Assembly (NCBI GenBank): GCA_964036045.1
Contig: OZ038378.1
Span: forward strand, 25,916,001 to 25,980,000
Length of the DNA: 64,000 nt
Direction: 5' to 3'
DNA from: Eutreptiella sp. 'Long Island Sound 2002'
Lineage: Eukaryota > Protista > Euglenida
Part shown: one piece after another, positions 32,901 through 56,131 of the stretch
How positions within the stretch are numbered: the first letter of the stretch is position 1
Layout of the letters: the number at the start of each line of letters is the position of its first letter
Made by a program: the position numbers and the translations under genes
Notes under the pieces: model-generated
Database searches by the model: none
What the model was told of the DNA's origin: nothing
What the model saw: the letters and a program-made list of their open reading frames with translations, nothing else

Positions 32901-33944
32901 GCGCATGGGCTATGAGGGACCTGCACAAGGGAGGTGCATGAACATGGAAGGAAACAGGAAATGATCGAGCGGGGGGGAACTGCTGCAGGTCACCCCATCT
33001 TCGCTGTCAAATGCCATGGCCAATGGAGGCAATGTGTGCTGACCCTCTCTATTGCTCTGACCAGTACCTGACCTTCCGTTCTCACAACACAGGCAAAGGT
33101 AGAAAGGGGACTGCCGTCAAATGGTGCGGCCTTTGACTGGTGCTCTTCTTCGCTCAGACGGCGTGGCCTTGTTGAGCACAGGTGACTCACCACAGGACTT
33201 CTGCGAACAACAGACCATAGGGATTGACCAGCCTCACAACTGGACGAGAGGGCGGCGCTGAGTGGCAGGACAAGGAGGAAGGGGGGCACCCCTCTTTGAT
33301 CCATTGCCTGCCATTTGCCGCCAATAATCCTCCATAACCCTCCAGAATACATCAATTGCCACCCAAAAAACAAATGCTTGTCTGACCTTAGGCACAACAA
33401 CAATGATACCGCAGCGCAGGGCACTTGGCATGCACCGCATTCGGGAACGCCTTTTGTGGGAGGGCTGCAGAGCTGCACATCTTGAGGAGCGGGCAGGCCA
33501 GTTCTGGGAGGGCAGCATATGTAACACTTCTGCGGACTTTGGGCAGGGTCGCATGTGGGGCTGAGTGGCAGTTGTTGGCATTCACATGCCATAACCCACT
33601 TGAGCCTTTCCCTCTGTAGCAGCCAATCAGCACCAGACCGGCGGCCAGGGCCGTGTCCAGCCTGCCCATGGGGCGCGTGTAGCGCTACTGGAGTTAGACA
33701 AAGGCTTGCCATAGCAAGAGCCCTGCCACCACCAGAAGCCAGTTGACAACAACAGACACTCCTGCCCCAGGGGTGCAGTTCATGGCCATGGATGTCACGC
33801 CATAGATTCCAACACACTCTCCTTTTCCTGCAGCAAAAGGGCATGCAAACAGCCAGAAGGAAGCGTTGTGGGAACAAGGAGTAGGGAGGTCAGGCCCCAC
33901 TCTTGGGACCGGGCACCGCAGTATGCAAAGGGTTGTCGAGGCAC

Positions 33945-34250
33945 ATGGGGAAAATTGGCTTGCACAGGTGGGGGGTCGTTCGGCCCCCTTTTCAAGACCA
34001 TCCCCCCTCCCTTCAGGGCTCCCATGACGGCCCCCTTACAGGCCTAAGTGGGAGGTTTGGAGGGGCAGGGGGGGCTGAGGTACCCGAACATATGTGGCTC
34101 AAAATGATCCCCATGATGCACTGATCATTTGGAGTTCTGTATCATGGGGGGATTTTTTGAAAAAAAAAATCTATTGCCTATCGGCAAGCCACCTCGAAGA
34201 GGGAGGGAGCACAGTCAGTCAATCAGGTAGCTAGTCACGAAGTCATTCAA
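33945..34250 (+). repeat. Dispersed ~300-bp repeat, copy 2 (copy 1 at 6770-7075)
   Basis: Same conserved blocks as 6770-7075. Confidence 0.75.
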
Positions 34251-34254
34251 AAGC

Positions 34255-34490
34255 CGACCCTTCCCCCCTCCAACATCCAAATAGGGTGAAAAACACATAA
34301 AGAGGGTCGAAAACATGGTTTACGCAGGATATCTGATCATTCATTATGAATGGTCAGAACATCAAAAAAATCGGTATTGAAAATTTCCATTTTTGAGCGG
34401 CCGAGAGTGGAAAAATGCATCAGCAGGTTGTGCCCCAGACCCTTGCCCCCGTCCAAACACCCAAATAGGGTGGAAAACACATGAATAGGG
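34255..34490 (+). repeat. ~190-200-bp satellite unit (LINE target repeat)
   Basis: caaatagggtg(a/g)aaaacacat...tttac..aggatat.tgatc...aaatttccatttttgagc.gccgag...gcaggttgtgcccca. Also seen at 39775-39894 (inverted), 40020-40118, 41004-41221 and 43740-43860. Confidence 0.8.
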
Positions 34491-37400
34491 CATTCGTCTA
34501 TTAGCGTCCGCTGGCCTATGTACAGAGGCAGAGGGGCGGGGAGGTGGGCCGAGTCGAGTTCAGGCGCCCGTGGCCTCCCCTACAAGCCCCCCGCCTGTGC
34601 CCGCACGGCGGCCAGGAGGGACGAGCCGGAGGGAACTAGGTCTCTTCCGTGCTGGCCCTGCCGTGCTGCCGCCGTGGCGGCAGTGTGGACTGGGATGGCG
34701 AAGGCGCCGAGGGCGCGTCCGCCACTGGGTCAGAGGAGCTCCCCCCCGCGGCGTCGGCCGCAACGCGAGGGGAGGGGGGGGGAGGGGCGCACGCGGAGCA
34801 TGTCCGCCACTAACCTAGTGGCCTTTGGCTGAGGCCGCCTCCAACCCCTGGGTGGGAATCGACTCAAGGCCGCCGAGATGCGGCTGAAAACCTCGAGGAG
34901 CGACGCCGGCGGTGGGGGGGGGCTGCTCTTCTGGGGGGGGGGGGGGGGGGGCGTGGGTCCCGCGATGCGGGTGGCGCTCCCGTGGAGTCGGTGGAGACGG
35001 CGGCGTCCGCAGGCACCGGCCCGGGGCCGCCGTCCCCCCCTGCCGTTGGTGGGGGGGAGAAAGGGTCAGCGTCCGCCTCGCCCGATCGCGTTGGCCCCTG
35101 ATTTACCGAGCCCCCCTGGTCAGCCAGGAGGTCAGGCGCCTGGCGCTTCGTGGGCCTGGGGTTGTCTAGCCCCAATGCCGAGGAGGGGCGGGTGCCCAGC
35201 GTTCTGGGAGGGGCCGTGCACTGGCGTGTCACCGGGGGGCCCGAGTCCGGGAGGGCCTGGGAGGCCGGGCGGGCCCGCCCCAGCCGAGAGGATAGCGCGG
35301 CCGCTCCTGCGCGCCGGTCCTCAGGGACGAGCACCTGGCATCCTGGCGCGACCCAGGGCGGGGCTCTCGGACAGTGCGGGCCCGCACAGGGGTCGGTGTG
35401 TCCTTCGTGGCCCGCCCGGCAGCAGCGGCTGAAGCCCCAGCCCAGGCTTTTGCACCTGGCGCACGACGGCGCCCCATGCTCCAAGCAGAGCACGCTCTGA
35501 GTGCCACTGCCCGCCCCTAGCGGGCGACTGCGCTGCGGGGCAGCGAGCGGGATGCTTCTGGGCGGCGCCCGCGGGGGCCTCCTGGCATACGGCAGTAGGT
35601 GGGGCCCCCCCTCGAGGGGGCGTGGGAAATAGCCCATAAGAAAACGGTCGTCCGGCGGCGGCCGCATGCGGGCAGGCGCTCGTAGGCACCGGACCCACGA
35701 GTCCCAGCAGTGCGTCGCCAGGCGCACAAGCTGTAGCATCACCTTGTGGTGTGCCGCGAAGAACGGGCGGGCCGAAAGTCCCGCGCACACGCGGCCCCCC
35801 AGGGGGAGGAGTGAGCGGCAACGCCCCAGCGGGGCCCCGCTCAGCAGCGTGCCCGCCACAAGGTGGCGCTCCGCCAGGCCCACTGTCTTGCGCAGGACTT
35901 GGGCTCGCTCCCCAAGCGGCAGGCGCGTACCCCGCAGCCGGTGGTCCGGGGAGGCTGGGAGCAGCCGCCCCACAAACGCCTCATAATCCAGGGCCAGCTC
36001 AGCCCAGGAGACTTCCGCCGGCCCCGGCATCCAGGCCAGCGCCCGGGCCCACCTGACTAAGTCCGGGATGAAGTCTCGGGGCCACCGCCAGCCCGGCGGG
36101 GTCCCCGGCCGGAGCCGTGGCTGGTTGCGGACCGCGTCCCCTGGCAGGGGGCCGACGAAATCGTCCCAGGGGTAGGGGTTGCGAGGCCGCGGATGCGGCT
36201 GGTTTGGGAAGAGGGAGCGGCTGGTCCCCGTGGCTGGCTGCCATGCGGGCAGCGAGGACTGCGAGGTACATGCCGGACAGGCGGTACAGGAACTCGTCGA
36301 GGAGCCCCCGATCCACCCCCTGCACCAGCCGGAGGGGGAATAGACCCGCCTTCCGCAGGCAGGATGGCCACTGGTCCGGCGGCCCCAGGTGGGGGATTGC
36401 CGTCGCCGCGTCGCTGAGCCAGGGACGCCATGTCTCTCTAGCACTTTCCCACTCCAGGCAGTCCCACAGGACGTGGACTTCGTCCTCGTGTGCCGCGCCG
36501 CAATGGGGGCACGCGGAGTTGGTCCGCGTGCCATGGTCCGACACCCTGGCCGCTGTCCACAGGGCCCCAGCCATGAGGCCGCACAGCAACGACCTCTGCA
36601 ACTCGGTGGAGGCAGCCTGCAGTGCCGCGCGGCAAGCCGGGCCGTTCGCCCCGTCGCCCAGCCCCCTGAAGGTGACCGGGCGCCGCGCCTCAAGCTGGCG
36701 CGAGGAATGGCAGCGAAGGCTGTGCCGGACCCGGTGCTGGACCTGGCGGAGGGGCTCCTGCACGAAGTGCAGCGGGTGCTCTTGTCCCAGGACATCCCAG
36801 CCCCACCAGCCCTCGCGCGGGCTCCAGCCAAGGGTGGTCGCCGTTTGGAGCGCGCGGCCCACCGGGCCCGTCCCGGGAGGGCGGCCACCTGACTCCCACA
36901 TAGCCTGGGTGAAGACCTGGGTGACCCCCGGCCGTCGGGCCGCCTAGGCCAGCTAGAGGAGCCCTTCGTACCGTGTGTGCATGATCGAGGAGACGCAGTG
37001 CCCCTTGGACAGGACCGTGAAGACAATCTCCTTGGCCCGGGACAAGCGCGTGGCTCCCCATAGGGCCCGCACGACCGCGGTCTCCAGCCCCCGCAGGTCG
37101 GGGTCCGTCACCGATGCGACGGCCACCCCATGGAGCGCCAGCGGGGTGACCAGCGTGCTGATAGCCCGCTCTCGGCGGTCATAGGTGGAGAGGTAGGGGA
37201 GGCGGCGGACAGCGCTCTGTCCCGCTTGCAGGCGCCGGGACAGCACCAACCCCGTGATCCTTGAGCCCCCAATGGCGACGTCGACGCCGAGCTGGCGGAA
37301 AGTCGCCGCCAGCGGGATCGGGACTCCCCGGAGCAGGACCGCCGGGGCGCCCTATTCTCCCTGGACCAAGGAGCAGGAATTGTCTACGCGGACGTTTTGG

Positions 37401-39726
37401 CCTGTGATCTGCAGCCACTCCTCCAGCGTGGGGACCGTCCCCTGCAGTGAGGCCGCGCCCAGGTCCACCGCCTGGGTGTCATCCGCATAGCGTGACGACC
37501 CCAGCGCGGCGTAGCCGGGGCCTGCATCCTTGAGGGGGAGAGGGGCCCTAGGTTCCAGGTCCTCCGCCGCGTCCTCATCCAGAACGGGGGGGTGGGCGGC
37601 CGTCCGCGCGCACACCTCCCGGCGAAGGGAGTCCACCTCCCATTTCCAGATCGTGGTGAGCAGGTTCACCAAGATCACCGACAGGGGGCACCCCTGGAGG
37701 GTGCCGTTGGTGGCTTGCCACCACAGGCCGAGGGCCCCGGCGATCTTGAAGGCCCGGCGGAGCTGCTTGTACATGGCCCCGAGGGCACGGCACGTGCCCA
37801 GGTCCATGCCTAGCTCCAACGCCAGGGCCAACACGACCGCCTGGGGGATGAGATCAAAACATTTGACGTAGTCGATACTCATCCCCGCGATGGCCCATCC
37901 ATGGAGGCGACACAGCTCCAAGAGGACCTGCGTCACCGCCGCCCCATCCAGGGCACTCCTGGCGGGCGGAAGCCAAAGGCCGCCGGGTGGGCCCAGGACT
38001 CTTGCCACGCAATGGCATCCGCCATAGCACACTCGCTCATAGCCGGTAGACCATGGACAGGTCCGTGAGGGGGCGGGTGTTCAGGGGCCTCGGCGGGCCC
38101 TCCTTGGGGATGAGGGCTAGATAGCCCTCAGCCAGGCGGGCCGGCCATTTGCCCAGGCGCTCCACCTCCCGCAGGAGCTCCGCCAGCCAGCCCAGCAACT
38201 TGTCGGGAAGGGAGCGGAGGTCGGCCAGACTGCATCCGTCCAGCCCCAGAGCCGAGGGCTTCATGCGGGAGAGCCCCTTGCGCAGGCGGAGGCCGTCCAA
38301 CCGTGAGGCAATCATGGGGACCCGTCGGACATGGTGCCCATATCGGCGGAGGAAGGCCGTGGGATCCGGCTCGGGGTCCATCACATACTTGCGGTGTGTC
38401 AGGCGTCAGGCGTCTTGCAAGAGGCCATCCATCTCTGCCAGATTGGCCGTGGCAGTGCCATCCGGCCTGGAGAGGAAGGTAACCGGCGGGGCGTAGGACT
38501 CATCCTTTAGCCACCGGTACACTGCCCCCTGGTTGGAGGTCCAGGCCTCCTCCACCCATGAGCGCCACTCGTGGAGGCGGCCCTGGTCCTCTGCCCGTAG
38601 CGTGGCCCGGACCTTACCTGCCAGCGTCGTGCGGAGGCGGCGGAGTAACCCCAACGGTGCCAGCCGGTCGTGCGAGCCATCCGGCACCAGGCCAGCATAC
38701 TCCGGGCCCAGCGCTCGGGGCCTCCTGAGGCGACGCCGGAGCGCCGTCCACGCCTGCTGTACCATGCTCGGTATCGCGCCCACGGCACGCGCCGGTCGCT
38801 CCAGCCGGCGGAGGACGTCCCGGAGGGGGCCCTGAGCCGCCTCGATGCGTGCCAGAGGGCAGGTGAGCGGCCCCCCGGTGTCCCGGCACTGCTTGGGGCA
38901 GAGGTGCACCTCTCGGAGGGGCTGGTAGGTCCCCGTGCCGTGGGGAAGGTGTGGGGGGGCTAGCGGCAGCATGGCCCGGGCCGGGAGGGAGTCCGGCGTG
39001 ATGTCCGGGCAGGCCAGGGCAAGGAGGGTTTCTTCCGCGGCCGTGGTCCGTAAAGCCTAGGCCCCGTCCACATCCCCGGTGGATGGGGCCGCTTGCCGGC
39101 TGGCCTCCAAGGGGTCCAGGAGGCGCTACGTAAGGAGGAGCCGCTCATGTTCCTCCCGCGGGGCCAGCGCGACAGGCTTGGGGCTGACAAACTTCACCAC
39201 CCGCTGAGACGAGCCCTTTAGGTGCAGGTCAAAACGTACCGGGGCATGGCCAGGGATGGCCCCGCACGGCAGCCGCACCGCCACGACAAGCAGCCCGTCT
39301 ATGCGCGAGGGGCGCGTGCCCTCCGGGCCTTGGTACGAGCAGAGAGGGTCCCGCCGGAAGGCGGATGCCAGCTCAAGGTCCGCGTCCATCAGCCGGCGGG
39401 TCAGGAGGGACGCCAACTCGCGGCGGAGGGTGTTGATCACACCCTCCAGGGACGCAATCTGGCGCTGGAGCGAGGCGATCATCGCCTGCTCCGCGGTGGG
39501 GGGTTCGCCATGAGGCAACGGATACTGGGCTCGCATACGCCCCCGTGTCACAGGCGCATGGCCATCAATGGGGAGGTGGGGGGGGGGGGGGGGCAGTTGG
39601 GCGGATCCACCGCCCCCTTTGCGCCCCTTGGAACGGGAGGGGCTGCGTGCCGCCCCCTAGTCGATGGTCGCGGGCGGTGCGCCCGCAAGGAAGGGAGCCA
39701 GCGCCGCGCCTATGGCCATAAGCACC
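34491..39726 (-). mobile_element. Degraded APE-type non-LTR retrotransposon (LINE family B), copy 1, internally deleted in ORF1/endonuclease
   Basis: Endonuclease end TRPSRIDGLL..GHAPV (39126..39551). RT: ALGLDG, LALIPK..RPLT (38037..38384); SIDYVKCFD, QGCPLS, RYADD (37352..38032). CPHCG..EDEVHVLWDC (35999..36901). Long Pro/Arg-rich C-terminal extension to 34864. Several stops and frameshifts. Confidence 0.9.
39641..39726 (-). ncRNA. Candidate HDV-like self-cleaving ribozyme at the LINE 5' end
   Basis: Sense sequence GGTGCT-tatggccata..-GGCT(C)-CCT-TCCTTGC-GGG-CGCACC-G-CCC..GGGGGCGG-C-acgc-AGCC fits the P1/P2/P3/L3/P4 order. L3 UCCUUGC resembles HDV UCCUCGC. One P1 mismatch and an atypical J4/2. 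Folded by eye only. Confidence 0.55.
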
Positions 39727-39774
39727 GCGGGGTGCTGTAGGACGGCAACCAGCTGGGTGGCCCATGCAATTTTC

Positions 39775-39894
39775 TAGCCTCTGCAGCTGAAAAATGGAAA
39801 TTTCCGAAACTGACTTTTTTTTTACCTTCTATCCATCCACAATGATCAAATATCCTATGTAAAGCATGTTTCAAACCCTATTCATGTGTTTTTT
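39775..39894 (-). repeat. Inverted copy of the target satellite unit
   Basis: Reverse complement aaaacacatgaatagggtttgaaacatgctttacataggatatttgatc matches 41004-41060. Confidence 0.85.
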
Positions 39895-40118
39895 AGGCCT
39901 CTTGTTGTGAACCTGCACGTGGTGAGGCTGCCTAGCTACGCTACAATTTTCCTTTGACGCCTCCGCGTCTTCCCTTTCTTTCGCCCTCGCGCCCTGGGCA
40001 CGATGGGTGACCAAGCGGGGGTTGAGCAGGTCGTGCCCCAGCCCCCTTGGGGACCCCCCCCCCCCCCCCCGCCCGCAAAAAAAACACTCAAATAGGATGA
40101 AAAACACATAAATAGGGT

Positions 40119-41003
40119 ATTGCGCTTTTACAGTCCATAGGCCTATGTACAGAGGTCGAGTGGCTGGGGGGAAGGGCCGATCTCTGAGTTCAGCGCCCCT
40201 CCCCCCCGGGCAAATGCCCCCCGCCTATAATGAACGGCGGAACAGAGGGACGCGCCGGTCAAGACTATGTCTCTTCTGAACTCGCCCTCCCGTGCGCCAA
40301 GTTAGGCAGGACAAGCGCTCCCCCCACCACGGTTGGGCCCAAGCCAGCAGGTGCTGGCGCCGGAGGCTCGGCAGGCGGGGGCGAGCGCGCTCTCAGCGTG
40401 GTTGGGGCGGGCCAGGCCAGCGTCCGCAGCGCTACCGGCACCGGACAGGCCCCCGCAGCGGCCCCAAGGGTCGGGGGCGCGGCGATTGACCCGACCGCCA
40501 TCCTCCCGAGACTGCGACGTGGTGCCCGCGTCACGACGTGCACGCAGAGTGAGCCCGCCGCGCCCGGCGGCAATAGATGCCCCCTGTGCCTGGGAGCAGC
40601 CCCAGGGCTGCGAGATGTTTTTGGCAGCGTTTCTGCTGCACTGTTGGCACAGGGAGGCAGTCAGCCCCGCCCCCATCGCAATCCGCCCCCCTCCCCCACC
40701 ACGGGGCAAGTAGGGCGGGTAGGGCAAGCAGGTGTGGGTGCACAAGCGTTGCAGAGCACGGCACACAATGCACAGTAGGCGGCACAGGGCATGGCGTAGG
40801 CAGCACAACGCATAGCGGCACGGCGCATGGCACAAGGACCAGCGCACAAGGCGCACCGGCGCCCGGACGCACAAACAGCACAATGCAGGGCGCACGGAGC
40901 ATAGGACACAACACACAGTGCGCAGCAGTGCACGGCCCGCCGTGCACGGCACCAGCAGGCATAGGGCACAGCACAGTGCACGGCATGGAACAACACACAG
41001 TGC
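40119..41003 (-). mobile_element. LINE family B, copy 2: short 5'-inverted (twin-priming-type) insertion with 18-bp TSD
   Basis: 40119-40307 is the family 3' end on (-). 40308-41003 matches 41582-42293 in the opposite orientation. TSD aaaacacat(a/g)aatagggt at 40101-40118 and 41004-41021. Confidence 0.8.
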
Positions 41004-41221
41004 AAAACACATGAATAGGGTCTAAAACATGCTTTACATAGGATATTTGATCGTCGTGGATGCTTAGAATGGAAAAAAAAATCAGTTTTCAGAAATTTCC
41101 ATTTTTGAGCTGCCGAGGCTGGCTGGAAAACTGCATGAGCAGGTTGTGCCCCAACCCCCTTGGGAACGCCCCCCCCCCCAAAAAAACCCCAAATAGGGTG
41201 AAAACCGCACAAGGAAAAGGG
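41004..41221 (+). repeat. One complete target satellite unit between two LINE insertions
   Basis: Runs from aaaacacatgaatagggt to the next aaaaccgcacaaggaaaaggg, ~200 bp. Confidence 0.8.
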
Positions 41222-43739
41222 TCTTGCGCTTTTACAGTCCATAGGCCTATGTACAGAGGTCGAGGGGCTCGGGAGAAGGGCCGATCTTCCAGTTCAGCAC
41301 CCCTCCCCGCGGGCAGTTGCCCCCCGCCCGTAGCGAACGGAAGAACAAAGGGGCGAGCCGGTCAACACTATGTCTCTTCCGAACTCGCCCTTCCGTGCGC
41401 CAAGTCAGGCGTGGACGTTCCCCCAAGGGGTGCCGGCGCTGCGGCATCAGTCGCCCCAGGGGGGCGATTTGTCACGGGGGGGCCGCCGTGCCGGCGGCCC
41501 CATTGAAAATAGCGTGGCCTAGCGGCCTAACTGCAGGGGCATCGGTCGGCCTGGGCCTGGTGCACTGCGCACCGTGCACAATGCACAGTGTGCTGTTCCC
41601 TGCCGTGCACTGTGTGCTATGTGCTGTGCTTGTTGGTGTTGTACACGGTGGGCCGCGGACCGCCGCGCACTGTGCACTGTGTCCTATGCCCCGTGTTCTG
41701 TGCACTGTGCCGTCCGTGCACCTTGGCGTTGTGGCGCCCTATGCATTGTTCCCCTGTGCCGCACCCTGTGCGGCTGCTGTGTGCTGGCTGCCTGGGCTGT
41801 GCACTGTGCTCACTGATGTGCACTGTGTGCCCTGCTGTGCAGCTCCTTTGCATCCACACCTGTTTGCTTTACCCGCCCTGCTTGCCCTGTGGTAGGGGGG
41901 GGGGCGAATCGCGATGGGGGTGTGGGGTGACCGCCTCCCTCGGCCGACAGTGCAGCAGGAAACGCTGCCAAATACGTCCTACAGCCTTGGGGCGGCTCCC
42001 AGTCATGGGGGGGGGGGGGGATGTGTTGCCGCCGGGAGTGGCGGGCTCACTACAAGTGCGCGTCGTGATGCGGGCACTATGTCGCAGTCTGGGGAGGGCA
42101 GCGACCGGGTCAATCGCCACGGCCCCGGCCCTCGGGGCCGCTGCAGTGGTCTGTCCGACGCCGGCAACAACGCGGAGGCCGGCCTGGCCCGCCCCAACCA
42201 GGATGAGAGCGCGCTCGCTCCCGCCTGTGGGGCCTCCGGCGCCAGCAGCTGCCGGCCCCGGGCCCTGCCGCGGTGGGGGGGGCACCTGTCCCGGCGACCT
42301 GTGCCCCTCATGCCCCGTGCGGCAGCATCGGCCGAGTCCCCAGCCCAGCTGCAGGCAGCGGCGGCACAATGGCGAGGGGGGCGTGGAAAATAGGCCATGA
42401 GGAAGCGTGCTGCTCCCCCTAGCCGTATGCGCACCGGCGCGCGCAGCCGGTGCAGCCACACATCCCGCAGGTGCAAGGCGAGCCTACAGGTGCAGCACCA
42501 TGTACGCTCGAGCCGCGAAGAGCGGCCGCGCCCGCAGCCTTGTGGCCCTGGAGTGTGAGATGTTCCTGGGCTGGGCCCTGCCAACGTCTCCGCACCATCA
42601 GTTGCCGGGGACACAACTCCCGCTAGGCGAGCGGGCACAAGTCCTGCGGCAAGCGTCGCGGCTGCTGCAGCGCCACATGGCAGCTGGACAGCTCCTGTGT
42701 GAGGCGCCCAGTGACCGCTGCCGGGCGCTTGTTCCGCTCGGTGGCAGTTCTGCCCAGGTGACGTCCCCTGCGCCGTCCTGCCAACACAAGGCCGCTACCC
42801 ATCGAACCAAGTCCTAGGCGAACGCCGGCTCCCACGGCCATCTCGGCGGGACGCCTGGGCGGAGTCGCATTGCCGGCACCGCCGGCAGTCGCGGCAGGGG
42901 ACCGCACCACCCCTTGCCTCCCGGCGCCCGGCGCCGCGGAAAAAGGGCCTCCCCTTGCCCCAGCTCCCCTGAGCGGGTACAGGCATACCTGGCTGTCAGC
43001 CACGCGAGGTACATCCCACATAGCTTGTACACGAACTCGTCCACCTACTCCCGGTTCGCCCCAGCCAACAGGGCTAGGCACGCGCGTCGCAAGCACGCCG
43101 GCCAGCGTGTCGGGGGGGGCAGCTGCAGCTGCTCCGCCGCTCACAGGACCAAGGCGCGCTAGCTGGCTCTGGTTGCCTCCCAATCCCAAAGCACATGCGT
43201 CTCATCTTCATGTTGCGAGCCGCAGCAGAGGCAGCTTGACGTGGCTTGCATGATGTGCCCACGCACGCAGGCCGCCGTCCACAGCGCCCTTGCTAGCAAC
43301 CCCCACAAGAGAGAGGCCTCCAGCTTTGTGGACGCCACGCGGAGCACCGCGCGGCAGGCCCCCCACATCAACCCCGTCCTCAAGTCTGCACAGGTCGCTG
43401 GGCAGCGCGTCTCCAATCCGCGCATGGCATGACGGCGCAGGCTATCCCGCACCATGTGCTGGATTTGCCACATGGGCTCTTGCACCAGGTGCAGCGGCTC
43501 CGTTTGGCCCGGCACTGCCCAGGTCCACCAACCCTCTAGTGGCTGCCAGCCCAACAGGCTGACCACATGCAGGGCACGCCAGAAGGGGCCCGCCGTTAGT
43601 GGCCGGCGGCCGCTCTCCCAGATGGCCTGCACAAGGACTTGCACCGTTCCTGGGGTGCGTGCAATGGGGGCCATCCAGAGTACCAGCTCGTAGCGGGTGT
43701 GCATCACCGAGGAGATGTGGTGGCCTGGTGCCAAGACGA
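41222..43739 (-). mobile_element. LINE family B, copy 3: 5'-truncated, with degenerate ~21-bp TSD
   Basis: 43159..43887 HISSVMHTRYE..IWESGRRP..CLCCGSQHEDETHVLWD is homologous to 35999-37050. 3' end gcgcttttacagtccataggcctatgtacagagg. Flanks tgaaaaccgcacaaggaaaaggg (41198) / tgaaaaccacacaaagaaggg (43740). Confidence 0.85.
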
Positions 43740-43904
43740 TGAAAACCACACAAAGAAGGGCCAAAACGTGGTTTACATAGGATATTTCATCGTTGCGAAT
43801 GGTCAGAACATCAATTCTTTTCGCAAAATTTCCATTTTTGACCTGTAGAGGATGGAAAAGTGCTTCCGCAGTTTGTGCGCACACCAAATGCCAGTGAAAC
43901 GCCT

Positions 43905-44755
43905 ACAAACAGCCATTTTGAAGCTTTTGGGGGCGCCACGGCTCGGGCTAGATGTGCCCAGCGGCCACTATGTGGGTCCCCATGGGTGCTCAAGTACCCG
44001 TATTGTCACCAAATGATGACCCAACCCGATCTCAGGAGCAATAGAAGGGTTCACGAAAATATCCAATTTTGGAAAATTTTCGAGTGTCATTAACCAACCT
44101 ATGCAAAATTAATTTTGGGGCTTTTGGGTGGCCCATGGCTCGGGCTACAGATACCTAGCGGCCACTACGTGCGTCCCCATGGGTGCTCAAGTACCCGTAT
44201 TGCCACCACATGATCACCCAAACCCATCCTAGGGGCATCAAAAGAGCTTTCATAAAGATCGAAATTTGTGAATCTTTTAAGTGTCACTAAACAGCATACG
44301 CAACAACAATTTTGGGGCTTTTGGGTGGCCCAAGGCTCGGGCTACAGAAACCTAGCGGCCACTACATGGGTCCCCATGGGTGCTCAGATACCCGTATTGT
44401 CACCAAATGACCACCCAAACCCATCCTAGGGGCATCAAAAGGGTTCCGGAAAAAGGCGAAATTTGAAATCTTTTCAATTGTCCCTAAATAGCCTACGCGA
44501 CAACAATTTTGGGGCTTTCGGGTGGTCCATGGCACAGGCTACAGAAGTCTAGCGGCCACTACATGGGTCCCCATGGGTACTCAAGTACCAGTATTGTCAC
44601 CAAATGATGACCCAACCCAATCGTAGGGGCAACGAAAGGGTCTTGGAAAAATTAAATGTTGAAATCTTTTCAACTGTCACTAAACAGCCGACGCAACAAC
44701 AATCTGGGGCTTTTGGGTGGCCCATGGCTCCAGCTACAGAAGCCTAGCGACCACT
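43905..44755. repeat. 197-bp satellite, ~4.3 units
   Basis: gcg(g/a)ccact recurs at 43961, 44158, 44355, 44552 and 44747 (spacing 197, 197, 197, 195). Confidence 0.95.
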
Positions 44756-46000
44756 GCCTGTGCAGCCAAGTACACGCGCGCAGCGATTCCACGTGTGCAC
44801 CCACCACTTGTGAACCAGTTACCAAGACCAGAAAACCGCCGACCGAAACACCTCGCCGGTCGCATGGCGCAACACAACCCCCACAACTCTGCACTCTGCT
44901 GAGTGTGCCGGTTGGGGGGGATGACGACGGAACGCAGTTCATGTGCACCATGTAAAAACAACCCAGCCCAATACCGAAAAACATCCAATGCAGCGTCTAC
45001 AAACATTGTAGCGAAGGCATGGCGGTGCAGGTTCACCGGCCGCCCCATAGCACGAGTCACGGCCCACCTTAGCGCATCAGGTGGAGTCCACACTTCCATA
45101 GCAAAAACAATCGCTGTGGCCAACACATGCAGCACTTTTAGGGGCACCGGCTATCCCACGATCCCCCACCGCTGCCAGCAGTACAACCCGGCCGAAAACA
45201 GGCCAATGCCCCTTCGGGGCCGCACATGCCACTGAATAAACCTAACATTTTATTTAAGTGGAGAGGGTGGGGATGGGCCGCCGTCGCCAAACGCAGCCAT
45301 TGTGCAATACATTTGCAAAAACGCACGCGGGTGTGACCAAATGTGTTTCGCCTGGGTATCAATGTGCTTGCCCAAGAGCAAGATGCGCGTCGTCGGATGC
45401 AGAACCGACTTGGGGGACACCAAGAAACCAGCCGCATGTAACGCCTCCACCACCCGGCGGGGGACTTCCTTGAGCTCCCTAGGGCACCCACCCAACAAGA
45501 GAAAATCATCCTAATAGTGAAAAATGATCATATGCAGTGGAACGATCCGCGCGATTACCTTTTGCAGGGCCAGCTGACACAACAACGGGGAAAATTTCCA
45601 GCGAAATGGCATGCGGCACATGCGGTACATGACCCCCCCCCTGGCCGAAAGCCAAACCCAAACGCCCGTGCCAAACGACCAGAAGGCGGTTTTGAAATCT
45701 ATGTGCGTGCAATAAAGGGGCTCATGTTGAGGCCATGCACTCTGGCGATCAGCCATGTCCTTCCAAATAAACAAAGAAAAACGGGCCGGGCAGGGCATGG
45801 TGTCGTTGAAGTCCACCAAGTGGAAAATCACCGATACTTTCTATGACGATTTTGGAATAATGAAGGGCCAGCACGTGGCGGGTCAACCGGGGCCCTCTAC
45901 TACCCTCTCAACAACACCACCATCCTCAAGGGGCAACATGGGCTCCACCAGCAGGTCCGTTTCTTGCTTGTGAAGGACCGCCGGCGGCGGGGAGATCTCG
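44734..46000 (-). pseudogene. DIRS-like retroelement reverse transcriptase + RNase H remnant
   Basis: WPFIIPKSS*KVSVIFHLVDFN; HIDFKTAFWS; RMPFRWKFSP; IIFHY*DDFLL; GFLVSPKS..LLLGK; RNase H-like FVDAALD..QQSAELWGL. Confidence 0.85.
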
Positions 46001-49400: not shown

Positions 49401-49649
49401 GGCATAGCCGTTCACGGAATCACGAGCGCCGGGATTGGGCCATGAGGCAACGGAAACTGGGTTCACATAAGCCCCCGTGTCACAGGCGCATGGTCATAAC
49501 CACATTGTTCAATGTCATGCTTGCTGCACTGCAGCGTAGACTAGTTCTGTACCACACCAGGTGGTTGCTGACTGTGCATTGGCTCTGCTCCTCTGAACAG
49601 TGAGGTCAGCTCGCACCCACCACCCACCCACAGTGCCGGTTAGACTCTA

Positions 49650-51246: not shown

Positions 51247-54200
51247 TTATCGACCCTGTCCTGGGTTCCTGCGTTTCCTGAGCCTTTGCTTCTTGCGCTG
51301 CCGCCTGGTGTCACTCACATCTGTGCTGAAGCACAGTGTGTCCGCTGCTGACAGTTCATTCAACAGTACTCCCTGGTGTGTGTGTCCTGTCCTCATTTCC
51401 TCACTTTCTGTACTGCTTGAGGAGTATGGTCCCATTTCACGTGGCGCTGGCTCCCCGGATGCCTCAGCTGTCAGTTCATCACTGTCCATGGGTACCATAC
51501 CCAAGGATGACCAGAGTGCCCTGGTGCCCTCTGACTCTGATCCCGACCCTCCCCTCAAGCCTACCGTGGACTCTGACCCTGATGATGAATTTGGAGCAAC
51601 ATGCTGAGACCACAGTGGGCTCAGACACATGCCTTCCATTGCCAATTCATTCGCCACCCCGTTTCCCTGCACGTTGACATGTGCTGGGACATGCTCCCAC
51701 CTGACTTCTCTTCCCGGCGTCGCCATTTCCTGGAGCAGCATTTCCCAGACTAGGACGTGGTCCTGCAGTTTTCCAGACGTGGTTGTCCATCCCTTTGACT
51801 TCCAGTGTTGGGCCCTGCCAGTCGCTCCCAGCCGCAGGTATTGCGAGTCTGTGAGGATTGCCAGTTTTGGCACCCAGAATCCCTGTAAGGCTTCTACGGC
51901 TGCCCAAAGCTCTGCTCCGTTATTTGTTTGCCTGTGATGTGTTGGTACGTAGCCGCAGAAGCGTACCTCTGGTCCTTGATCATCTTCCGCCGCGAACACG
52001 CCAAAGCCTCCGGCCCTGCGCATGTCATTGTGGCCCAGTCTTTTGGACGATCTGTCTGTGTACACTATCCTGTAGCCCTTTGCCACCAGTTGTGCAATCA
52101 GATTTTGCACTCCTTGTGGCACTCCCGGGCCTGCCTGCCTCGGGCGCTTCGGGCGTGATTCCGTTTCCCTTCGCCAACTGTGATTGTTGGCTGATCTCTC
52201 TTGGGTGAAGCACTCCGTGTGTGTTTGCCACCATGCATTCAATCCCCCATGTACTTGCACTTCCCCTTGTCGCGGCTGCACTCCGGTATCTCGAAGTTGT
52301 TCCAGTGATTTTTGAAAGCCTGTCCATTGTTCCCTACGCTCCCCTGTGTAAAATCCCACCCACTCAGATAGCTCCCTTAGCCATGTTGTCAGGTACGACG
52401 TGAACACCGGCGACGCTCCTGCCTTGACTTCGCATCGGTACCGCCAGTGGGCACTTCTTGCTGACCACATTGCCCAGCCTTGGTTCGTGTTCAGTAACCA
52501 TTCCTGGTCGTCGGACTCCATCATGTCTCGAACTGTGGATGTCCCGTTATCTGTTTCCACCTGGCCATAGTAGTGCTGTATAACCGCCGCCGCCGCTTTG
52601 AACATGGGGCATTCGACCATCGCGTGCTTAACCGTCTCCTTTTGTGAACACCCCGGGCACTTGTCAGTGCCTGACCTCTTGTAAACTCTTGCATGTACGG
52701 TCAGTTTGTGCCACGGCGCCTTTTGCGCAAAGTCCCGAACCCTCGGCGGCAGCTGTGCCTGTGCCAACTGTTCCCATACCTCCGGTGTTTGCGGGTCGCG
52801 GACCCCTGGCTGAGAGGCGTAAAACTAAAGCAGCCATGCCCTGGTCCAGTTTTGGGTGTGGACTGCGGGGGTATCAAACCCCCCTTGTGACGGGACTTTG
52901 TTGAGGAGTCGTCCGCCGTGATTGTAGACCCCTTTCCATATCCGAGGCAGTGCATTGAACAATCTTGCGTCCTCCAGGGATTGGAATTGACCCCACGTCG
53001 GCACCCCTTGCCGGATCAGTTTCGTGTTGTAGTAGGAGCAATTGAACTCATTTCGGAAATACACAAATTGCCACAATGGCAGGCGGTCCCGGTTTGCCGG
53101 GGGGGCCACCTGCGGGGCTACTCGCTGAATGTTGGAATGTGCCTTTGCCGACCATCCCAAGAACGTTAGATCAGCCGTTCGGACCATGCCCAGTTGAATA
53201 TATGGAAGGTTGTCCGTGGACGGTGTGAACCCGATGGTTGTTGCCCATGCATAGAAGGTCTCCACTGCCTTGTCGGGAAATTTGTGAGGCTCTCCCAACA
53301 GGCTGACGAACGGAGCCGCTGCCTGGTGCATAAGAAACAGCTCCGGCTCTGGCAGTGCCAGTCCCCCTTGCGTTCTTGGTCGTGAAAGGATTGGCAGGGT
53401 GATTCCCTAGCTGTTGGTACCCATAGTTACGTGGTACACCAACTTCAGTTGTCTGATCACCGAGACTGGGGCGTAGTATGCCTTGAATACCCAGGCCACG
53501 ACCGGCAGGATCCATGATGTCAGCATGAATGCACGTTCGTTCATTGACAGTTGCAGCGTGGATACCACCCTTGCGCGACGGAAGGCCTCTTGCAGTGCTG
53601 GTGCGAAAGCCTGCTCTATCGTCAGCACCCATCCTTGGTCATCCTGTTGGTGCCGAATATTCCCCAAGCGTACACCCAGATACTTGACGAAGTTTTTGAC
53701 GTCCACTCCAATGTCCCGAAAGCACCTCGCCCACTCCATTCCCCCACAATTGCGAACTATCGCTGCCGTTTTGCTAAGATTGACCTTCAACCCCGAAAAC
53801 TGTCCAAAACGAGACACCACTTCCCATACCCTCTTCAACAGTTGTGGGTTGGCTTGTCCTTCCAAGAAGATGATGAGGTCGTCTGCATACATCATGACAG
53901 TCAGCATTGGACCCAGGTCTTGTAGTGGGAAAATCACAAAGGATGCCACCAGGGAGAACAGCGCCGGGGAGAGTGGATCCCCCTGGCGCGTGCCTGCCCT
54001 CGGGTGGTGGTAGAGACCTGGGACGTATCGATCCTTTTCCAACGGAGTATAGATACGGTGCACGTAAAAGATGTAGTATCAGACGGATATACAAGAACGG
54101 TATGCACATTAGACCCAGTGCTGCCGACACCATCTCGTGAGGCATCGTGGGGAAAGCATTTCAGAAATCTACTGATAACGCCGCTCCTTCACGTAAGCCA

Positions 54201-56131
54201 TCCCAGAGTGCCCGTGACCCATAGACATGCTGGAGTATGCTTCTGTGGCGAAGGAAACCTATTTGCTGTGACGGGATGCAGTGAAGGAGTACATCCTCTA
54301 ACTGGATCGGGAGGATGTTAGTGAGCCACTTCTGCCTTGTAGTTTGCAGCGCAATTGGTCGGAGCGAGTCTGGTGTCTGCATTGCCTTCGTCTTGGGGAG
54401 CATTGTCACCACTCCCGAGGTCCATGTCTCCGGCATTTTGCCCACATCGAGGAAGCGTTTCAGTGAGTCATACATTTGCGGCTCGAAGATGCCCGAGAAC
54501 CTCTTGAAGAATTTTGCCGAGAAACCATCCAATCCAGGGGAACTGTTGCTGTTCAGCCTCTTAAGGCCTTCATGAACTATGTGCAGGGATAGTTGCTTGA
54601 AAGGGAGTCGACCTGCCTTGCGCAAACGCTGTTCCACTCCTAACGACTTCAGGTAGGCCACACATTCTTCTTCCGTGGATCCCGTTGGGGTGGACACTTT
54701 ATCCCAATGGTCCACCAGCTCTTTTGCCACCGCCTTTGCTCCCCGTATCGCCGAGCCTGTCCTGGATACCAGCTGCTGAAGTTTCTTTCGCTCTTGCAGC
54801 TCCCGCATTAACCGATACAATTCGTTCCTTTGCGTTCTCAGATCCCCTGAAGTTTCCCCCGTCGTGATCACCCCCTTGAGCTTAGAGAGTGTTTCCATGC
54901 CCGTTCTGTCACGCTGAGCCTTTTCATACACCCCCACCAGGAGGGTGTAGGCTGTTGCAGCATCTGTTGCTGCAATCCCCAGTGATGAAAGAAATTGGTA
55001 GACCGCTGGTGCGACAGAGTCTCTCGTGGAGCCACGCAGAAACCATAGGGCTTGTAGCTCAACCGACTGCTTTTTGTTTTTATGTTCCCTTTGATGGCTG
55101 ACCGCCTTCTTTTGAATGCAATTCAGCGCCTCTTCCCACCATTGATCTCCTGTTGATTTGATAGACTTGAGAGAGGTCTCCAGATCTTCCATTGCCTCCG
55201 GGTCTTCAAGGATGGTCTCTGGGCAGTAGAATCTGGGAACTGTGTCCTCTGTGTCGAAGGACGGGGGTGCGAATTCAGCCAGGATTGCCTTGTGGTCCGA
55301 GTTGGCAGCAAACATGGGGTACACGCTGGTCGCCAGGCTCAACAAGTCGGGTGTCGTGTGGATGCGGTCAATACCGCGTAGCCTCTGCGGGTCGAGTCGC
55401 TCTCCTTCTCGAGGGTAGCCGTATGTGAAGCCCGTCGGACATGATGCTTCCTTGTCCTTGATGTCCGTCAGGGTTGGACAATGGATGTCCACCCAAACAT
55501 CCTGCAGACCCGCTTTTGCCAAGGTTGTCACCTCCTGGTCTCTGGCACGTAAGGACGTGTCATGCTCAAACTCTGGGGGCGCGAAGGCGTCCCTGTGTTT
55601 TACAACTAAACTATTGTGATTAGCACATAAAATCAGGTTCGGTCCATGTAACTCCTTGGCGATGTCTTTCCATTGCGACTGTCGACGCGTGTGCTTGTGG
55701 TGGAAGTGGACCACAACTATGGCGATCTCCAGTGGACCACTCGACAGTGAGGCTTTCAGCGCCCTTGGAGACAAGAACTTCATTGATTGCAGTGTCCACT
55801 TGGATGTTTTCCACGCCAGTGCCACTCCTCCCCTTCCTTCTTCATGAACTGGTCCGTCCAGGCCATACCCAAACTTTGATAAGCACTGCATGCCCGCTTG
55901 ACGATCCTCCACCGTGACGAAGTGGGGCTCTTGGATGGCGAAGAAGTCCACCTCCAGGGACCGCAGCAGTGACCCTAGGGCCACTATGCGCTTTTGCTTA
56001 CGCTTTCTCATGGTTGTTTTCGTTTGAAACCCATTGATATTTTGGGACAATACTCTGAGCGTGCTGCTCAGAGGGATGCTTGATGCTAACGTCATCGCGC
56101 TGCTCCATTGGACGACGAAGCCTCCTTCCAT
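51247..56131 (-). pseudogene. L1/Tx1-like LINE ORF2: APE endonuclease - RT - CCHC knuckle - RNase H1-type (3 in-frame stops, 1 frameshift)
   Basis: SQNINGF, IQEPH, IDRIH, SDHKAI; SPGLDG, LRPIAL, SVDF*NAF (54161), RQGDPLSP, YADD, GLKVNLSK, KYLG; stops at 53407 and 52825; frameshift near 54030; CPGC..ETVKHAMVEC; YTDRSS, TNNGAEL, TDSQY, HVPAHVNVQGN. Confidence 0.95.

What the first reader, a model, noticed from the sequence alone, without database searches (positions are those of the whole stretch)
34255..43860. Three insertions of one LINE family at the same base of a ~200-bp satellite: a sequence-specific APE retrotransposon
Seen: the 3' ends of copies 1, 2 and 3 abut aaaacacatgaataggg (34474-34490), aaaacacataaatagggt (40101-40118) and gaaaaccgcacaaggaaaaggg (41199-41220), the same position of the satellite unit. 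Copies 2 and 3 have that motif duplicated on their other side (41004, 43740). The inverted satellite at 39894 also breaks at this motif. Known: Tx1- and R1-clade APE elements can be target-specific. Inference: this family targets a satellite site. I am not aware of a description in euglenids.
Basis: partly seen in the sequence, partly recalled or inferred. Interest (0 to 1): 0.75.

Follow-up and report, generated by a model that had tools for sequence, protein, structure and literature searches.

The report
Satellite-targeting LINE family in a euglenid
A large family of jumping genes (LINEs with an APE-type endonuclease) in this Euglena-like genome inserts, always in the same orientation, at one exact base of a ~190-bp repeat. 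It is a new protist example of the known "site-specific retrotransposon" lifestyle.

Summary

- **Window copies.** All three copies end at ...AAATAGGGTGAAAAACACATRAAKAGGG^ of the repeat. Copies 2 and 3 carry 20-23-bp target-site duplications with private variants.
- **Unbiased genome sample.** All 28 abut the motif or a look-alike, and 27 lie in the repeat.
- **Second 3'-end subfamily (copy 1's type).** It has at least 586 ends. At least 58% carry the motif under a strict count, so the preference may not be absolute.
- **Independent events.** In 40 non-redundant junctions the orientation is fixed, 5' truncations run from 40 bp to more than 2.5 kb, and duplications are 12-28 bp.
- **Empty sites.** At least 5,683 uninterrupted sites exist, so the motif is a target, not part of the element.
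- **The element.** The family (at least 4,295 RT candidates) encodes APE + RT + a CCHC finger. Its closest solved relative is human L1 ORF2p/L1-EN. The clade is unresolved.
- **The target.** The "satellite" is an internal module of a dispersed composite repeat, as with Tx1L in Tx1D.
- **Third subfamily.** It sits at one base of the neighbouring 197-bp satellite.

The scan already noted this family on other DNA of this genome (s1-192993). Verdict: a new member of a known kind, of moderate interest.

The parts
34165..34289 (+). 5' module ('UP') of the dispersed composite repeat that hosts the target satellite. It has a sharp left edge, AAATTCTATTGCCTATCGGCAAG.
   Evidence: Homology in 27 loci starts at this base, with unrelated DNA upstream in each locus.
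34280..34490 (+). One unit of the target repeat (SAT). It holds an empty target site at 34287-34306 followed by tcgaaaacatgg, and an occupied site ending at 34490.
   Evidence: families D5, D6.
34491..39416 (-). LINE copy 1, of the 'C1-type' 3' end (cattcgtctattagcgtcc...). It carries the APE C-terminus, RT and the C-terminal region. The reading frame is broken at about 38027 and 37965 and has stops.
   Evidence: tblastn places P0009 aa 239-1223 and the L065 ORF on it. The RVT_1 hit on 37352-38032 is weak.
39417..39775 (-). Sequence upstream of copy 1's APE remnant. It has no APE homology and a coiled-coil-like ORF piece. It holds a 60-bp piece (39507-39566) that recurs near other LINE copies. 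It may be the LINE's 5' region joined by an internal deletion; this is unresolved.
   Evidence: my own reading of the translation of ORF 39126-39551.
39776..39892 (-). Inverted SAT fragment (unit positions about 117 to 1) that ends at the outer edge of the motif. It is not a canonical 5' flank for copy 1.
   Evidence: (inverted repeat I2, 86% complementary to 41004-41120).
40023..40117 (+). 3' part of a SAT unit, ending in the occupied target motif. The left target-site duplication of copy 2 is 40098-40117.
   Evidence: (D12, D6).
40118..40307 (-). LINE copy 2, 3'-terminal 190 nt (C3-type end, tattgcgcttttacagtcc...).
40309..41000 (+). Inverted LINE segment of copy 2. It corresponds to LINE positions about 361-1070 from the 3' end, and the distal end is joined to the 3' segment. 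This is the geometry expected from twin priming.
   Evidence: (I1, I3, I6, I7). Copy 3's order is the canonical one, as seen in L003, L015, L018 and L019.
41001..41020 (+). Right target-site duplication of copy 2 (tgcaaaacacatgaataggg, against tgaaaaacacataaataggg on the left).
41004..41221 (+). Full SAT unit between copies 2 and 3. The left target-site duplication of copy 3 is 41199-41221.
41222..43739 (-). LINE copy 3 (C3-type), 5'-truncated downstream of the RT. It has a zf-RVT-like CCHC region at about 43183-43314.
43740..43880 (+). Right target-site duplication of copy 3 (43740-43760, tgaaaaccacacaaagaaggg), followed by the continuing SAT unit.
43897..44755 (+). SAT2, a 197-bp tandem array of 4.4 units. 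It is the next module of the same composite repeat and the target of a third LINE subfamily elsewhere in the genome.

Best explanation
This is a target-specific non-LTR retrotransposon family of the L1 group, encoding an APE endonuclease, RT and a CCHC finger. A full-length copy is about 6.5 kb and has no poly(A) tail.

**Proposed mechanism**
1. The element's protein recognises a ~30-bp site in a ~190-bp repeat unit: CCAAATAGGGTGAAAAACACATAAAGAGGG^(T/G)CTAAAACATG.
2. It nicks one strand after the GGG (within 1 nt).
3. It uses that 3'-OH to prime reverse transcription from the fixed 3' end of its own RNA.
4. The opposite strand is cut 12-28 bp away at a variable position, which gives target-site duplications of variable length.
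5. Incomplete reverse transcription gives 5' truncations.
6. Occasional priming from the second nick gives 5' inversions, as in copy 2.

**The target.** The repeat is an internal module of a dispersed composite repeat (UP - SAT units - 197-bp SAT2 units) present thousands of times. The LINE therefore lands in other repetitive DNA.

**Shown:** the fixed junction, the fixed orientation, the duplications, the truncations, the empty sites and the domain content.
**Inferred:** that the APE domain (with or without other protein parts) supplies the specificity, the exact nick position, and twin priming.
For: **Unbiased sample**
- The LINE-internal 26-mer (2 mismatches allowed) gives 29 genomic hits, of which 28 are real LINE ends.
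- All 28 are preceded by ...aaatagggtgaaaaacacataaagaggg or a look-alike.

**Junction catalogue**
- 40 non-redundant junctions from 57 loci plus the window share the same nucleotide and orientation. The flank consensus is strongly informative from -30 to -1.
- Both 3'-end subfamilies, C3-type and C1-type, use this site.
- C1-type has 586 ends genome-wide. Of these, 341 carry RAAKAGGG under the same one-mismatch budget; the control count is 0.

**Target-site duplications**
- They are 12-28 bp long, with the 3' edge fixed and the 5' edge variable.
- Several carry private variants shared by both sides: L005 28 bp, L045 23 bp, L021 20 bp, L048 20 bp, copy 3 21-23 bp.

**5' truncation**
- Truncation leaves copies of about 40, 45, 64, 78, 128, 131, 143, 203, 680, 887, 1350 and 2518 bp.

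**Empty sites**
- 99 of 114 motif sites are empty in loci chosen only for the repeat.
- At least 5,683 uninterrupted sites exist genome-wide.
- One array holds 17 units and no LINE.

**Off-target insertion**
- L014 is not in the repeat. It shares only aaattgggtgaaa at -28 to -16 and an A-rich ...tgg end, and has a short duplication.

**Protein**
- PF03372 scores 26.2 bits against a 24.5 cutoff, alongside RVT_1, in P0009, which is 64% identical to the family ORF.
- A profile of 12 APE-bearing relatives has invariant N, E, Y, D, N, D and H residues, YADD and CCHC.
- That profile hits L1 ORF2p at 7.7e-61 and L1-EN at 4e-8 over the whole domain.

**Full-length copy**
- At C1:22875035-22881568, SAT position 1 lies at the 5' edge and GAGGG lies at the 3' edge.
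Against: - No biochemical evidence shows that the APE cuts this site.
- The specificity of the C1-type subfamily is only bounded (at least 58%).
- Copy 1's 5' side is not canonical: it is an inverted repeat fragment with no duplication.
- The Asp of the usual S-D-H motif is not conserved in this family (SGH or PHH).
- Some copies were multiplied by local or segmental duplication (L008/L009, L026/L027, five copies on C10), so copy counts overstate the number of events.
Confidence: 0.88

Rival explanations
1. Specificity comes mainly from RNA-DNA pairing, not from the endonuclease. Read-through transcripts carry downstream repeat sequence, which anneals to nicked or broken repeat DNA and fixes the 3' junction. 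R1 needs its downstream 28S sequence for a precise start in a similar way.
For: - The element has no poly(A) tail and has an exact 3' junction.
- Copies sit inside a repeat that could be co-transcribed with them.
- The last ~25 nt of the C3-type end resemble the repeat sequence on the other side of the nick: gcttttaca(gtcc)atagg against gctttacatagg. This is my own reading.
Against: - The off-target copy L014 lies in non-repeat DNA. That DNA shares only a short motif 16-28 bp upstream of the nick, which is not the part an RNA tail would pair with.
- Strict strand and orientation choice, with staggered second cuts, fits a protein-directed nick.
- Three subfamilies with different 3' ends still cut after GGG.
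- The two mechanisms can coexist.
Confidence: 0.2
2. The pattern arose from one or a few ancestral insertions that were amplified together with the satellite by unequal crossing-over or segmental duplication.
For: - Some cases clearly are duplicates: L008/L009 (two identical 46-bp LINE stubs 244 bp apart), L026/L027 (identical), L010/L011, and five copies on C10.
Against: - More than a dozen different truncation points and different duplication lengths, with private variants.
- Copies lie on nearly all chromosomes.
- The tree of 3' ends is star-like. Copies 2 and 3 are 87% identical and not sisters.
- Two subfamilies share the site.
Confidence: 0.03
3. The motif and repeat belong to the LINE itself, as a 3' tail or transduced flank, so there is no targeting.
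For: The motif always accompanies the 3' end.
Against: - At least 5,683 uninterrupted sites and long LINE-free arrays exist.
- The same motif reappears at the 5' junction as a duplication, followed by the rest of the repeat unit.
- The repeat has its own host element with its own sharp boundary.
Confidence: 0.02
4. Insertion is random, and only copies that land in the harmless repeat survive selection.
For: Repeats are safe havens, and about 10% of sites are occupied.
Against: Selection cannot produce single-nucleotide precision and a single orientation within a 190-bp unit, seen in 38 of 40 junctions.
Confidence: 0.03

Closest known systems
Tx1L / Tx1 clade (L1 group): Xenopus Tx1L in the internal PTR-1 repeats of the Tx1D transposon; Keno, Mutsu, Kibi and similar families
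   Same: - An APE-type LINE of the L1 group with a CCHC finger after the RT.
- It inserts in one orientation at one site with target-site duplications.
- The target is an internal tandem-repeat module of another dispersed repeat.
- PMC4640811 names the Tx1 and R1 clades as the APE-type target-specific groups. The Tx1L-in-Tx1D detail rests on my own knowledge.
   Different: - The host is a euglenid protist, and the target sequence is different.
- Clade membership is untested, because no reference RT sequences were available here.
- Duplication length is variable (12-28 bp).
R1 clade (R1, TRAS, SART, Waldo and others of arthropods)
   Same: Sequence-specific APE LINEs in repeated targets, with exact 3' junctions and no need for a poly(A) tail in R1.
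   Different: The endonuclease and RT profile of this family matches L1-EN and L1 ORF2p. No R1Bm or TRAS1 endonuclease structure appears among the 60 best PDB matches. The target is a different kind of sequence.
ingi / L1Tc of trypanosomatids (same phylum, Euglenozoa)
   Same: APE-type LINEs of Euglenozoa with a conserved sequence pattern upstream of insertion sites and ~12-bp duplications (from my own knowledge).
   Different: - ingi and L1Tc show a loose site preference, carry RNase H and a C2H2 finger, and end in poly(A).
- In this family Pfam finds no RNase H, the finger is CCHC (zf-RVT-like), there is no A tail, and the site is about 30 bp long and precise.
Restriction-like-endonuclease site-specific LINEs (R2, CRE/SLACS/CZAR, NeSL, Utopia)
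   Same: The lifestyle of living inside multicopy targets. SLACS, CZAR and CRE occur in Euglenozoa.
   Different: Those elements have a PD-(D/E)xK endonuclease after the RT and no APE. This family has an N-terminal APE.

Membership tests
Target-specific APE-type non-LTR retrotransposon (functional class) | N-terminal APE (EEP-fold) endonuclease domain in the RT-bearing ORF | tested here: met
   PF03372 scores 26.2 bits (cutoff 24.5) at aa 82-292 of P0009, and aa 1 of the family ORF in L065 aligns to P0009 aa 222. Residues N67, E90, Y187, D220, N222, D275 and H301 are invariant in 12 relatives. L1-EN is matched at 4e-8 over the whole domain. The window's own copies keep only the last ~70 aa of the domain.
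Target-specific APE-type non-LTR retrotransposon (functional class) | Non-LTR-type reverse transcriptase | tested here: met
   RVT_1 is found in L065, P0009, P0010 and P0020. The profile matches human L1 ORF2p at 7.7e-61 and R2 at 1.7e-36. The YADD motif is invariant.
Target-specific APE-type non-LTR retrotransposon (functional class) | 3' junction at one nucleotide of one target sequence, in one orientation, across independent copies | tested here: met
   28 of 28 ends in the unbiased C3-type sample. 38 of 40 non-redundant junctions lie at the same base, and all are in the same orientation. At least 341 of 586 C1-type ends meet the strict flank count.
Target-specific APE-type non-LTR retrotransposon (functional class) | Target-site duplications and variable 5' truncation (hallmarks of target-primed reverse transcription) | tested here: met
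   13 duplications of 12-28 bp, several with private variants on both sides, plus two copies with none or a small deletion. Truncated copies run from 40 bp to more than 2.5 kb.
Target-specific APE-type non-LTR retrotransposon (functional class) | Unoccupied target sites exist | tested here: met
   99 of 114 sites are empty in repeat-selected loci, and at least 5,683 uninterrupted sites exist genome-wide.
Target-specific APE-type non-LTR retrotransposon (functional class) | The endonuclease cleaves the target sequence specifically | not testable with these tools
   This needs an in vitro nicking assay.
Tx1 clade (L1 group) | RT phylogeny places the element inside the Tx1 clade | not testable with these tools
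   No Repbase or reference RT sequences could be fetched. The only solved APE-LINE ORF2 is human L1, which is the best match.
Tx1 clade (L1 group) | CCHC zinc finger C-terminal to the RT | tested here: inconclusive
   zf-RVT (PF13966) scores 18-24.5 bits, below its 27.5 cutoff. A CxxC...H...C pattern is conserved in the 12-sequence alignment.
R1 clade | Endonuclease and RT closest to R1- or TRAS-type proteins | tested here: not met
   The profile search lists L1-EN (8sp5, 1vyb) at 4e-8 to 7e-8. No R1Bm or TRAS1 endonuclease chain is among the 60 best matches.
ingi clade | RNase H domain and C2H2 finger after the RT; poly(A) tail | tested here: not met
   Pfam finds no RNase H or C2H2 finger in P0009, P0010, P0020 or the window ORFs. 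The 3' ends have no A tail.
RLE-type site-specific LINEs (R2 / CRE / NeSL / Utopia) | PD-(D/E)xK endonuclease after the RT, and no APE | tested here: not met
   An APE domain is present at the N-terminus.

The most novel reading that the evidence does not exclude
This may be an independent origin of sequence-specific targeting, separate from the Tx1 and R1 clades, in an L1-group LINE lineage of Euglenozoa. Its sister subfamilies would have retargeted between two related satellites (SAT at AGAGGG^ and SAT2 at AATTTTGGG^) of one composite host repeat. That would give a natural series for studying how an APE-type endonuclease changes its DNA specificity.
Probability: 0.35. Interest if true: 0.6.

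Novelty: new member of a known kind. Interest (0 to 1): 0.45.

Why it matters
Target-specific APE LINEs are described mainly from animals, in the Tx1 and R1 clades (PMC4640811). I found no paper describing one in euglenids.

- It is a clear, high-copy example in a 2.3-Gb protist genome, with hundreds of occupied and thousands of empty sites and at least two different target sites among related subfamilies.
- That makes it useful material for studying how APE endonucleases acquire sequence specificity.
- It also helps in annotating a genome whose published assembly paper leaves a third of it as unclassified repeats.
- It explains part of the local structure of these composite repeats.

Tried and rejected
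- **More genome sequence.** The 5' ends of full-length copies and the flanks of the 586 C1-type ends could therefore only be addressed by coordinates and by counting fully specified patterns.
- **Flank letters via patterns.** I did not use degenerate patterns to read extra flanking letters.
- **Pfam on the window.** The window's own broken ORFs gave only weak RVT_1 and zf-RVT hits.
- **Rfam.** Nothing was found in 33000-46000. No HDV-like ribozyme was found in 39400-39900 even at E up to 10, and the fold there is no better than shuffles.
- **Structure prediction of the APE domain.** Not run. The only close protein with a whole APE (P0009, 1223 aa) exceeds the 1200-aa limit, and a protein cannot be cut by reference.
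- **RT phylogeny.** A tree against named LINE clades was not possible, because no reference sequences were available.
- **Names of distant relatives.** Almost none carried names; one is from a Diplonema ambulator transcriptome.
- **Host repeat as a MITE.** A search for terminal inverted repeats of the composite host repeat found none at a consistent distance, so its class is open.
- **Count RRGGG + LINE end.** Not a better estimator, because it excludes the TAGGG variant.
Full report
**1. What is in the window**

The region 34.2-43.9 kb is GC-rich (64-70%) and lies in a 51-57% GC background. It holds three minus-strand LINE fragments set in pieces of a ~190-210-bp repeat that I call SAT.

- Copy 1 starts at 34491, directly after ...aaatagggtggaaaacacatgaataggg.
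- Copy 2 starts at 40118, after ...aaataggatgaaaaacacataaataggg.
- Copy 3 starts at 41222, after ...aaatagggtgaaaaccgcacaaggaaaaggg.

Copy 1 has a diverged 3' end, about 75% identical over 216 nt. With 3 mismatches allowed, the target motif occurs 7 times in the window against 0.24 expected.

The motif is repeated on the far side of copy 2 (41001-41020) and of copy 3 (43740-43760). In each case the rest of the SAT unit follows (tctaaaacatgctttacatagg...). Copy 3's two motif copies share a diverged variant (aaaaccRcacaaRgaa), which marks them as a real target-site duplication.

**2. Structure of the three copies**

- *Copy 1.* It is colinear with a family ORF from the C-terminal ~70 residues of the endonuclease domain, through the RT, to the C-terminal region. 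The frame is broken at about 38027 and 37965 and has stops.
- *Copy 3.* It is truncated downstream of the RT and keeps a zf-RVT-like CCHC region.
- *Copy 2.* It is not a simple truncation. Its last 190 nt (40118-40307) are in LINE antisense order like the other copies. The segment 40309-41004 is the reverse complement of copy 3's 42291-41582.

Copy 3's order is the canonical one, because several other genomic copies are colinear with it. In copy 2 the distal end of the inverted piece (about 1070 nt from the LINE 3' end) is joined to the 3' segment (about 189 nt). Its proximal end (about 361 nt) abuts the 5' duplication. This is the geometry expected from twin priming; that reading is an inference. 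L028 shows a similar 5' inversion.

Copies 2 and 3 are 87% identical over their 3' 190 nt. Copy 2's nearest relative lies on another chromosome (L003, 90%), and the tree of 23 such ends is star-like with no support for a copy 2 + copy 3 pair. They are old, independent insertions, not a tandem duplication.

**3.

The window is C1:25916001-25980000 of a 2.28-Gb assembly. The 26-mer, which lies wholly inside the LINE, matches 29 places at 2 mismatches or fewer. One of them (L020) has no further LINE homology.

All 28 real ends are preceded by ...CCAAATAGGGTGAAAAACACATAAAGAGGG or a recognisable variant of it. Adding the LINE ends found by chance in 29 loci fetched only for similarity to SAT gave 40 non-redundant junctions.

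- All 40 have the same orientation: the LINE sense strand is the SAT minus strand.
- 38 lie at the same nucleotide.
- The flank consensus is CCAAACACCCAAATAGGGTGAAAAACACATAAAGAGGG.

Two 3'-end subfamilies share the site: C3-type (tattgcgcttttacWgtccatagg) and C1-type (cattcgtcNWttaRcgtccRctgg, the type of copy 1).

For C1-type I could only count. There are 586 ends at 1 mismatch or fewer (reversed-pattern control 0). Of these, 341 still match when the 8-nt flank RAAKAGGG is added under the same total budget. That is a strict lower bound of 58%. Only 65% of my verified in-motif flanks match that 8-mer exactly, while 37 of the first 100 perfect LINE ends listed do. I therefore estimate that roughly 60-80% of C1-type ends sit at the canonical motif. 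The remainder could not be examined, so the preference is strong but may not be absolute.

**4. It is a target, not part of the element**

- In the 29 SAT-selected loci, 114 motif sites were found. Of these, 99 continue straight into the repeat (empty), 12 carry a LINE 3' end and 3 are other variants.
- Genome-wide, at least 5,683 uninterrupted sites (32-mer, 3 mismatches or fewer) lie on all chromosomes.
- One locus holds 17 consecutive 188-bp units with no LINE.

At 13 copies both junctions could be read. The duplications are 28, 23, 21, 21, 20, 20, 20, about 21, 18, 14, 14, 13 and 12 bp. The 3' edge is always at ...GGG, and the 5' edge varies. Several carry private substitutions on both sides (L005, L021, L045, L048, copy 3). 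Two copies have no duplication or a 4-bp deletion, and one has a larger target deletion. The truncated copies are about 40, 45, 64, 78, 128, 131, 143, 203, 680, 887, 1350 and 2518 bp long.

One copy, reconstructed from coordinates alone, spans C1:22875035-22881568 (6.5 kb). SAT position 1 lies at its 5' edge and GAGGG at its 3' edge.

One C3-type copy (L014) lies outside any SAT. Its site shares aaattgggtgaaa at -28 to -16 and an A-rich stretch ending in tgg, and its duplication is about 8 bp. This single case hints that a motif some 16-28 bp from the nick is what gets recognised.

Some copies were clearly multiplied later by local or segmental duplication: L008/L009, L026/L027 and L010/L011.

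**5. The element**

The RT piece of copy 1 finds at least 4,295 candidate loci in the genome (150 scored, all at E of 1e-80 or lower). Some have open frames of 1,800-2,100 codons. The family ORF in L065 has RVT_1.

A public predicted protein 64% identical to it (P0009) has Exo_endo_phos above Pfam's cutoff at aa 82-292, and RVT_1 at 675-827. L065's first residue aligns to P0009 aa 222, so the window's family continues from that domain.

Twelve APE-bearing relatives align with invariant N, E, Y, D/N (in GDFN), D (in RID) and H residues, with YADD in the RT and a CxxC...H...C finger. By my knowledge of L1-EN, this is the pattern of the catalytic set N14, E43, Y115, D145, N147, D205 and H230.

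The profile of that alignment matches these solved structures:
- human L1 ORF2p at 7.7e-61, in two stretches;
- isolated L1 endonuclease structures at 4e-8 over the whole domain;
- R2 proteins more weakly;
- no R1Bm or TRAS1 endonuclease among the best 60.

Pfam finds no RNase H. The family is therefore an L1-group APE LINE. Whether it belongs to the Tx1 clade could not be tested, because no reference sequences were available.

HMMER against 1.84 billion representatives finds 6,486 relatives at E of 0.001 or lower. One relative, 31% identical, comes from a Diplonema ambulator transcriptome. The protein-atlas look-alikes are APE+RT clusters.

**6. The target's own nature**

SAT is not a free-standing satellite only. 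In most loci it is the middle module of a composite dispersed repeat:
- a ~125-bp 5' module that begins sharply at AAATTCTATTGCCTATCGGCAAG (window 34165), with unrelated DNA upstream in 27 loci;
- then 1.3-5 SAT units;
- then units of a 197-bp satellite, SAT2 (window 43897-44755).

I found no consistent terminal inverted repeat, so the class of this host repeat is open. A LINE landing in the internal tandem repeats of another dispersed repeat is the situation known from Xenopus Tx1L in Tx1D (my own knowledge). PMC4640811 lists transposons among the known targets and names the Tx1 and R1 clades as the APE-type target-specific groups.

**7. A third subfamily with another target**

In L051, a LINE 3' end 72% identical to the C1-type end sits in SAT2 after ...CAATTTTGGG. 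Its LINE-only 27-mer has 13 genomic matches. Twelve of them reappear when AATTTTGGG is required upstream. Related subfamilies therefore use different sites in the two satellite modules of the same host repeat. Both sites end in GGG.

**8. Mechanism and rivals**

The best reading is target-primed reverse transcription, started at a sequence-specific nick after AGAGGG (within 1 nt) on the SAT plus strand. A variable second-strand cut follows 12-28 bp away. Pairing between a read-through RNA tail and the target may add to the precision and cannot be excluded. The L014 case and the strict strand choice favour recognition by protein.

The evidence in sections 3 and 4 rejects three other explanations: amplification of a single insertion, the motif being part of the element, and selection acting after random insertion.

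**9. Novelty**

Full-text searches found no description of a target-specific LINE in Euglena. The published assembly paper reports LINEs as 1.5% of the genome and 32.7% as unclassified repeats.

The scan itself has already recorded this family on another piece of the genome (s1-192993) and a MITE-targeting LINE elsewhere (s1-228045). A note on this window proposes an HDV-like ribozyme at 39641-39726. Rfam gave no such match even at E up to 10, and the fold is unremarkable.

This is a new member of a known kind. It is well supported and of moderate interest. The main points beyond the known pattern are the protist host, the target inside a composite repeat, and the apparent retargeting between subfamilies.

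**Limits**

As a result, the 5' ends of full-length copies, the flanks of most C1-type ends, and the youngest subfamily's target were not read.

Noticed in passing
L051:2200-2460 (G000:C10:13308550); genome-wide: A third LINE 3'-end subfamily (tacgtctccgattaatgYccatagggc) sits at ...CAATTTTGGG^ of the 197-bp satellite SAT2. Twelve of its 13 ends carry that flank. Related subfamilies appear to have different targets.
   Followed up: partly
window 34165-34289 and 27 loci: The target repeat is the middle module of a dispersed composite repeat (5' module - SAT units - SAT2 units - a tail ...ccagcgtgaaaacggctaagtcctcac...). It has a sharp 5' edge, AAATTCTATTGCCTATCGGCAAG. I found no terminal inverted repeat, and its class is unknown.
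   Followed up: partly
window 40309-41004 against 41582-42291; also L028: Copy 2 carries a 5' inversion with the geometry expected from twin priming. L028 has a similar inversion.
   Followed up: partly
window 39417-39775; the 60-bp piece 39507-39566 also at window 49439-49497, L013:1961 and 2391, L029:2131, L046:322: Upstream of copy 1's APE remnant there is no APE homology. Instead there is a coiled-coil-like ORF piece and a 60-bp segment that recurs next to other truncated LINE copies. It may be the LINE's 5' region joined by an internal deletion.
   Followed up: partly
window 39776-40022: An inverted SAT fragment ends at the outer edge of the motif and is followed by 130 bp found nowhere else in my loci. 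In L005:2280-2330 two target motifs lie head to head (ccctctttatgtg/aaaaacacataaagaggg) next to a LINE end. Inversions at the target site seem to recur.
   Followed up: no
L065 aa 60-75; P0009 aa 295-305: The usual S-D-H motif at the end of the APE domain reads SGH or PHH in this family. The His is invariant but the Asp is not conserved.
   Followed up: no
window 40118-40145 against 41021-41045: The last ~25 nt of the C3-type LINE end (gcgcttttacagtccatagg) resemble the repeat sequence just beyond the nick (catgctttacatagg). This could be chance, or a remnant of target mimicry.
   Followed up: no
Rfam gave no ribozyme match at E up to 10, and the predicted fold is no better than shuffles (z = 0.52).
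   Followed up: partly
window 54122-54544 (minus strand): A weak RT-like match (23% identity to P0009 aa 627-770) suggests a different retroelement family in the same window.
   Followed up: no
for example G000:C10:61005467 and C7:28743830: A subfamily about 74% identical in the RT has many near-identical copies with open frames of 1,800-2,100 codons. It may be recently active. Its 3' end and target could not be read.
   Followed up: no
window 43897-44755 against 41060-41130: SAT and SAT2 share a core (aaaatcgRWtttgaaaatttYca...tg.c) and a similar unit length. They look like diverged relatives.
   Followed up: no
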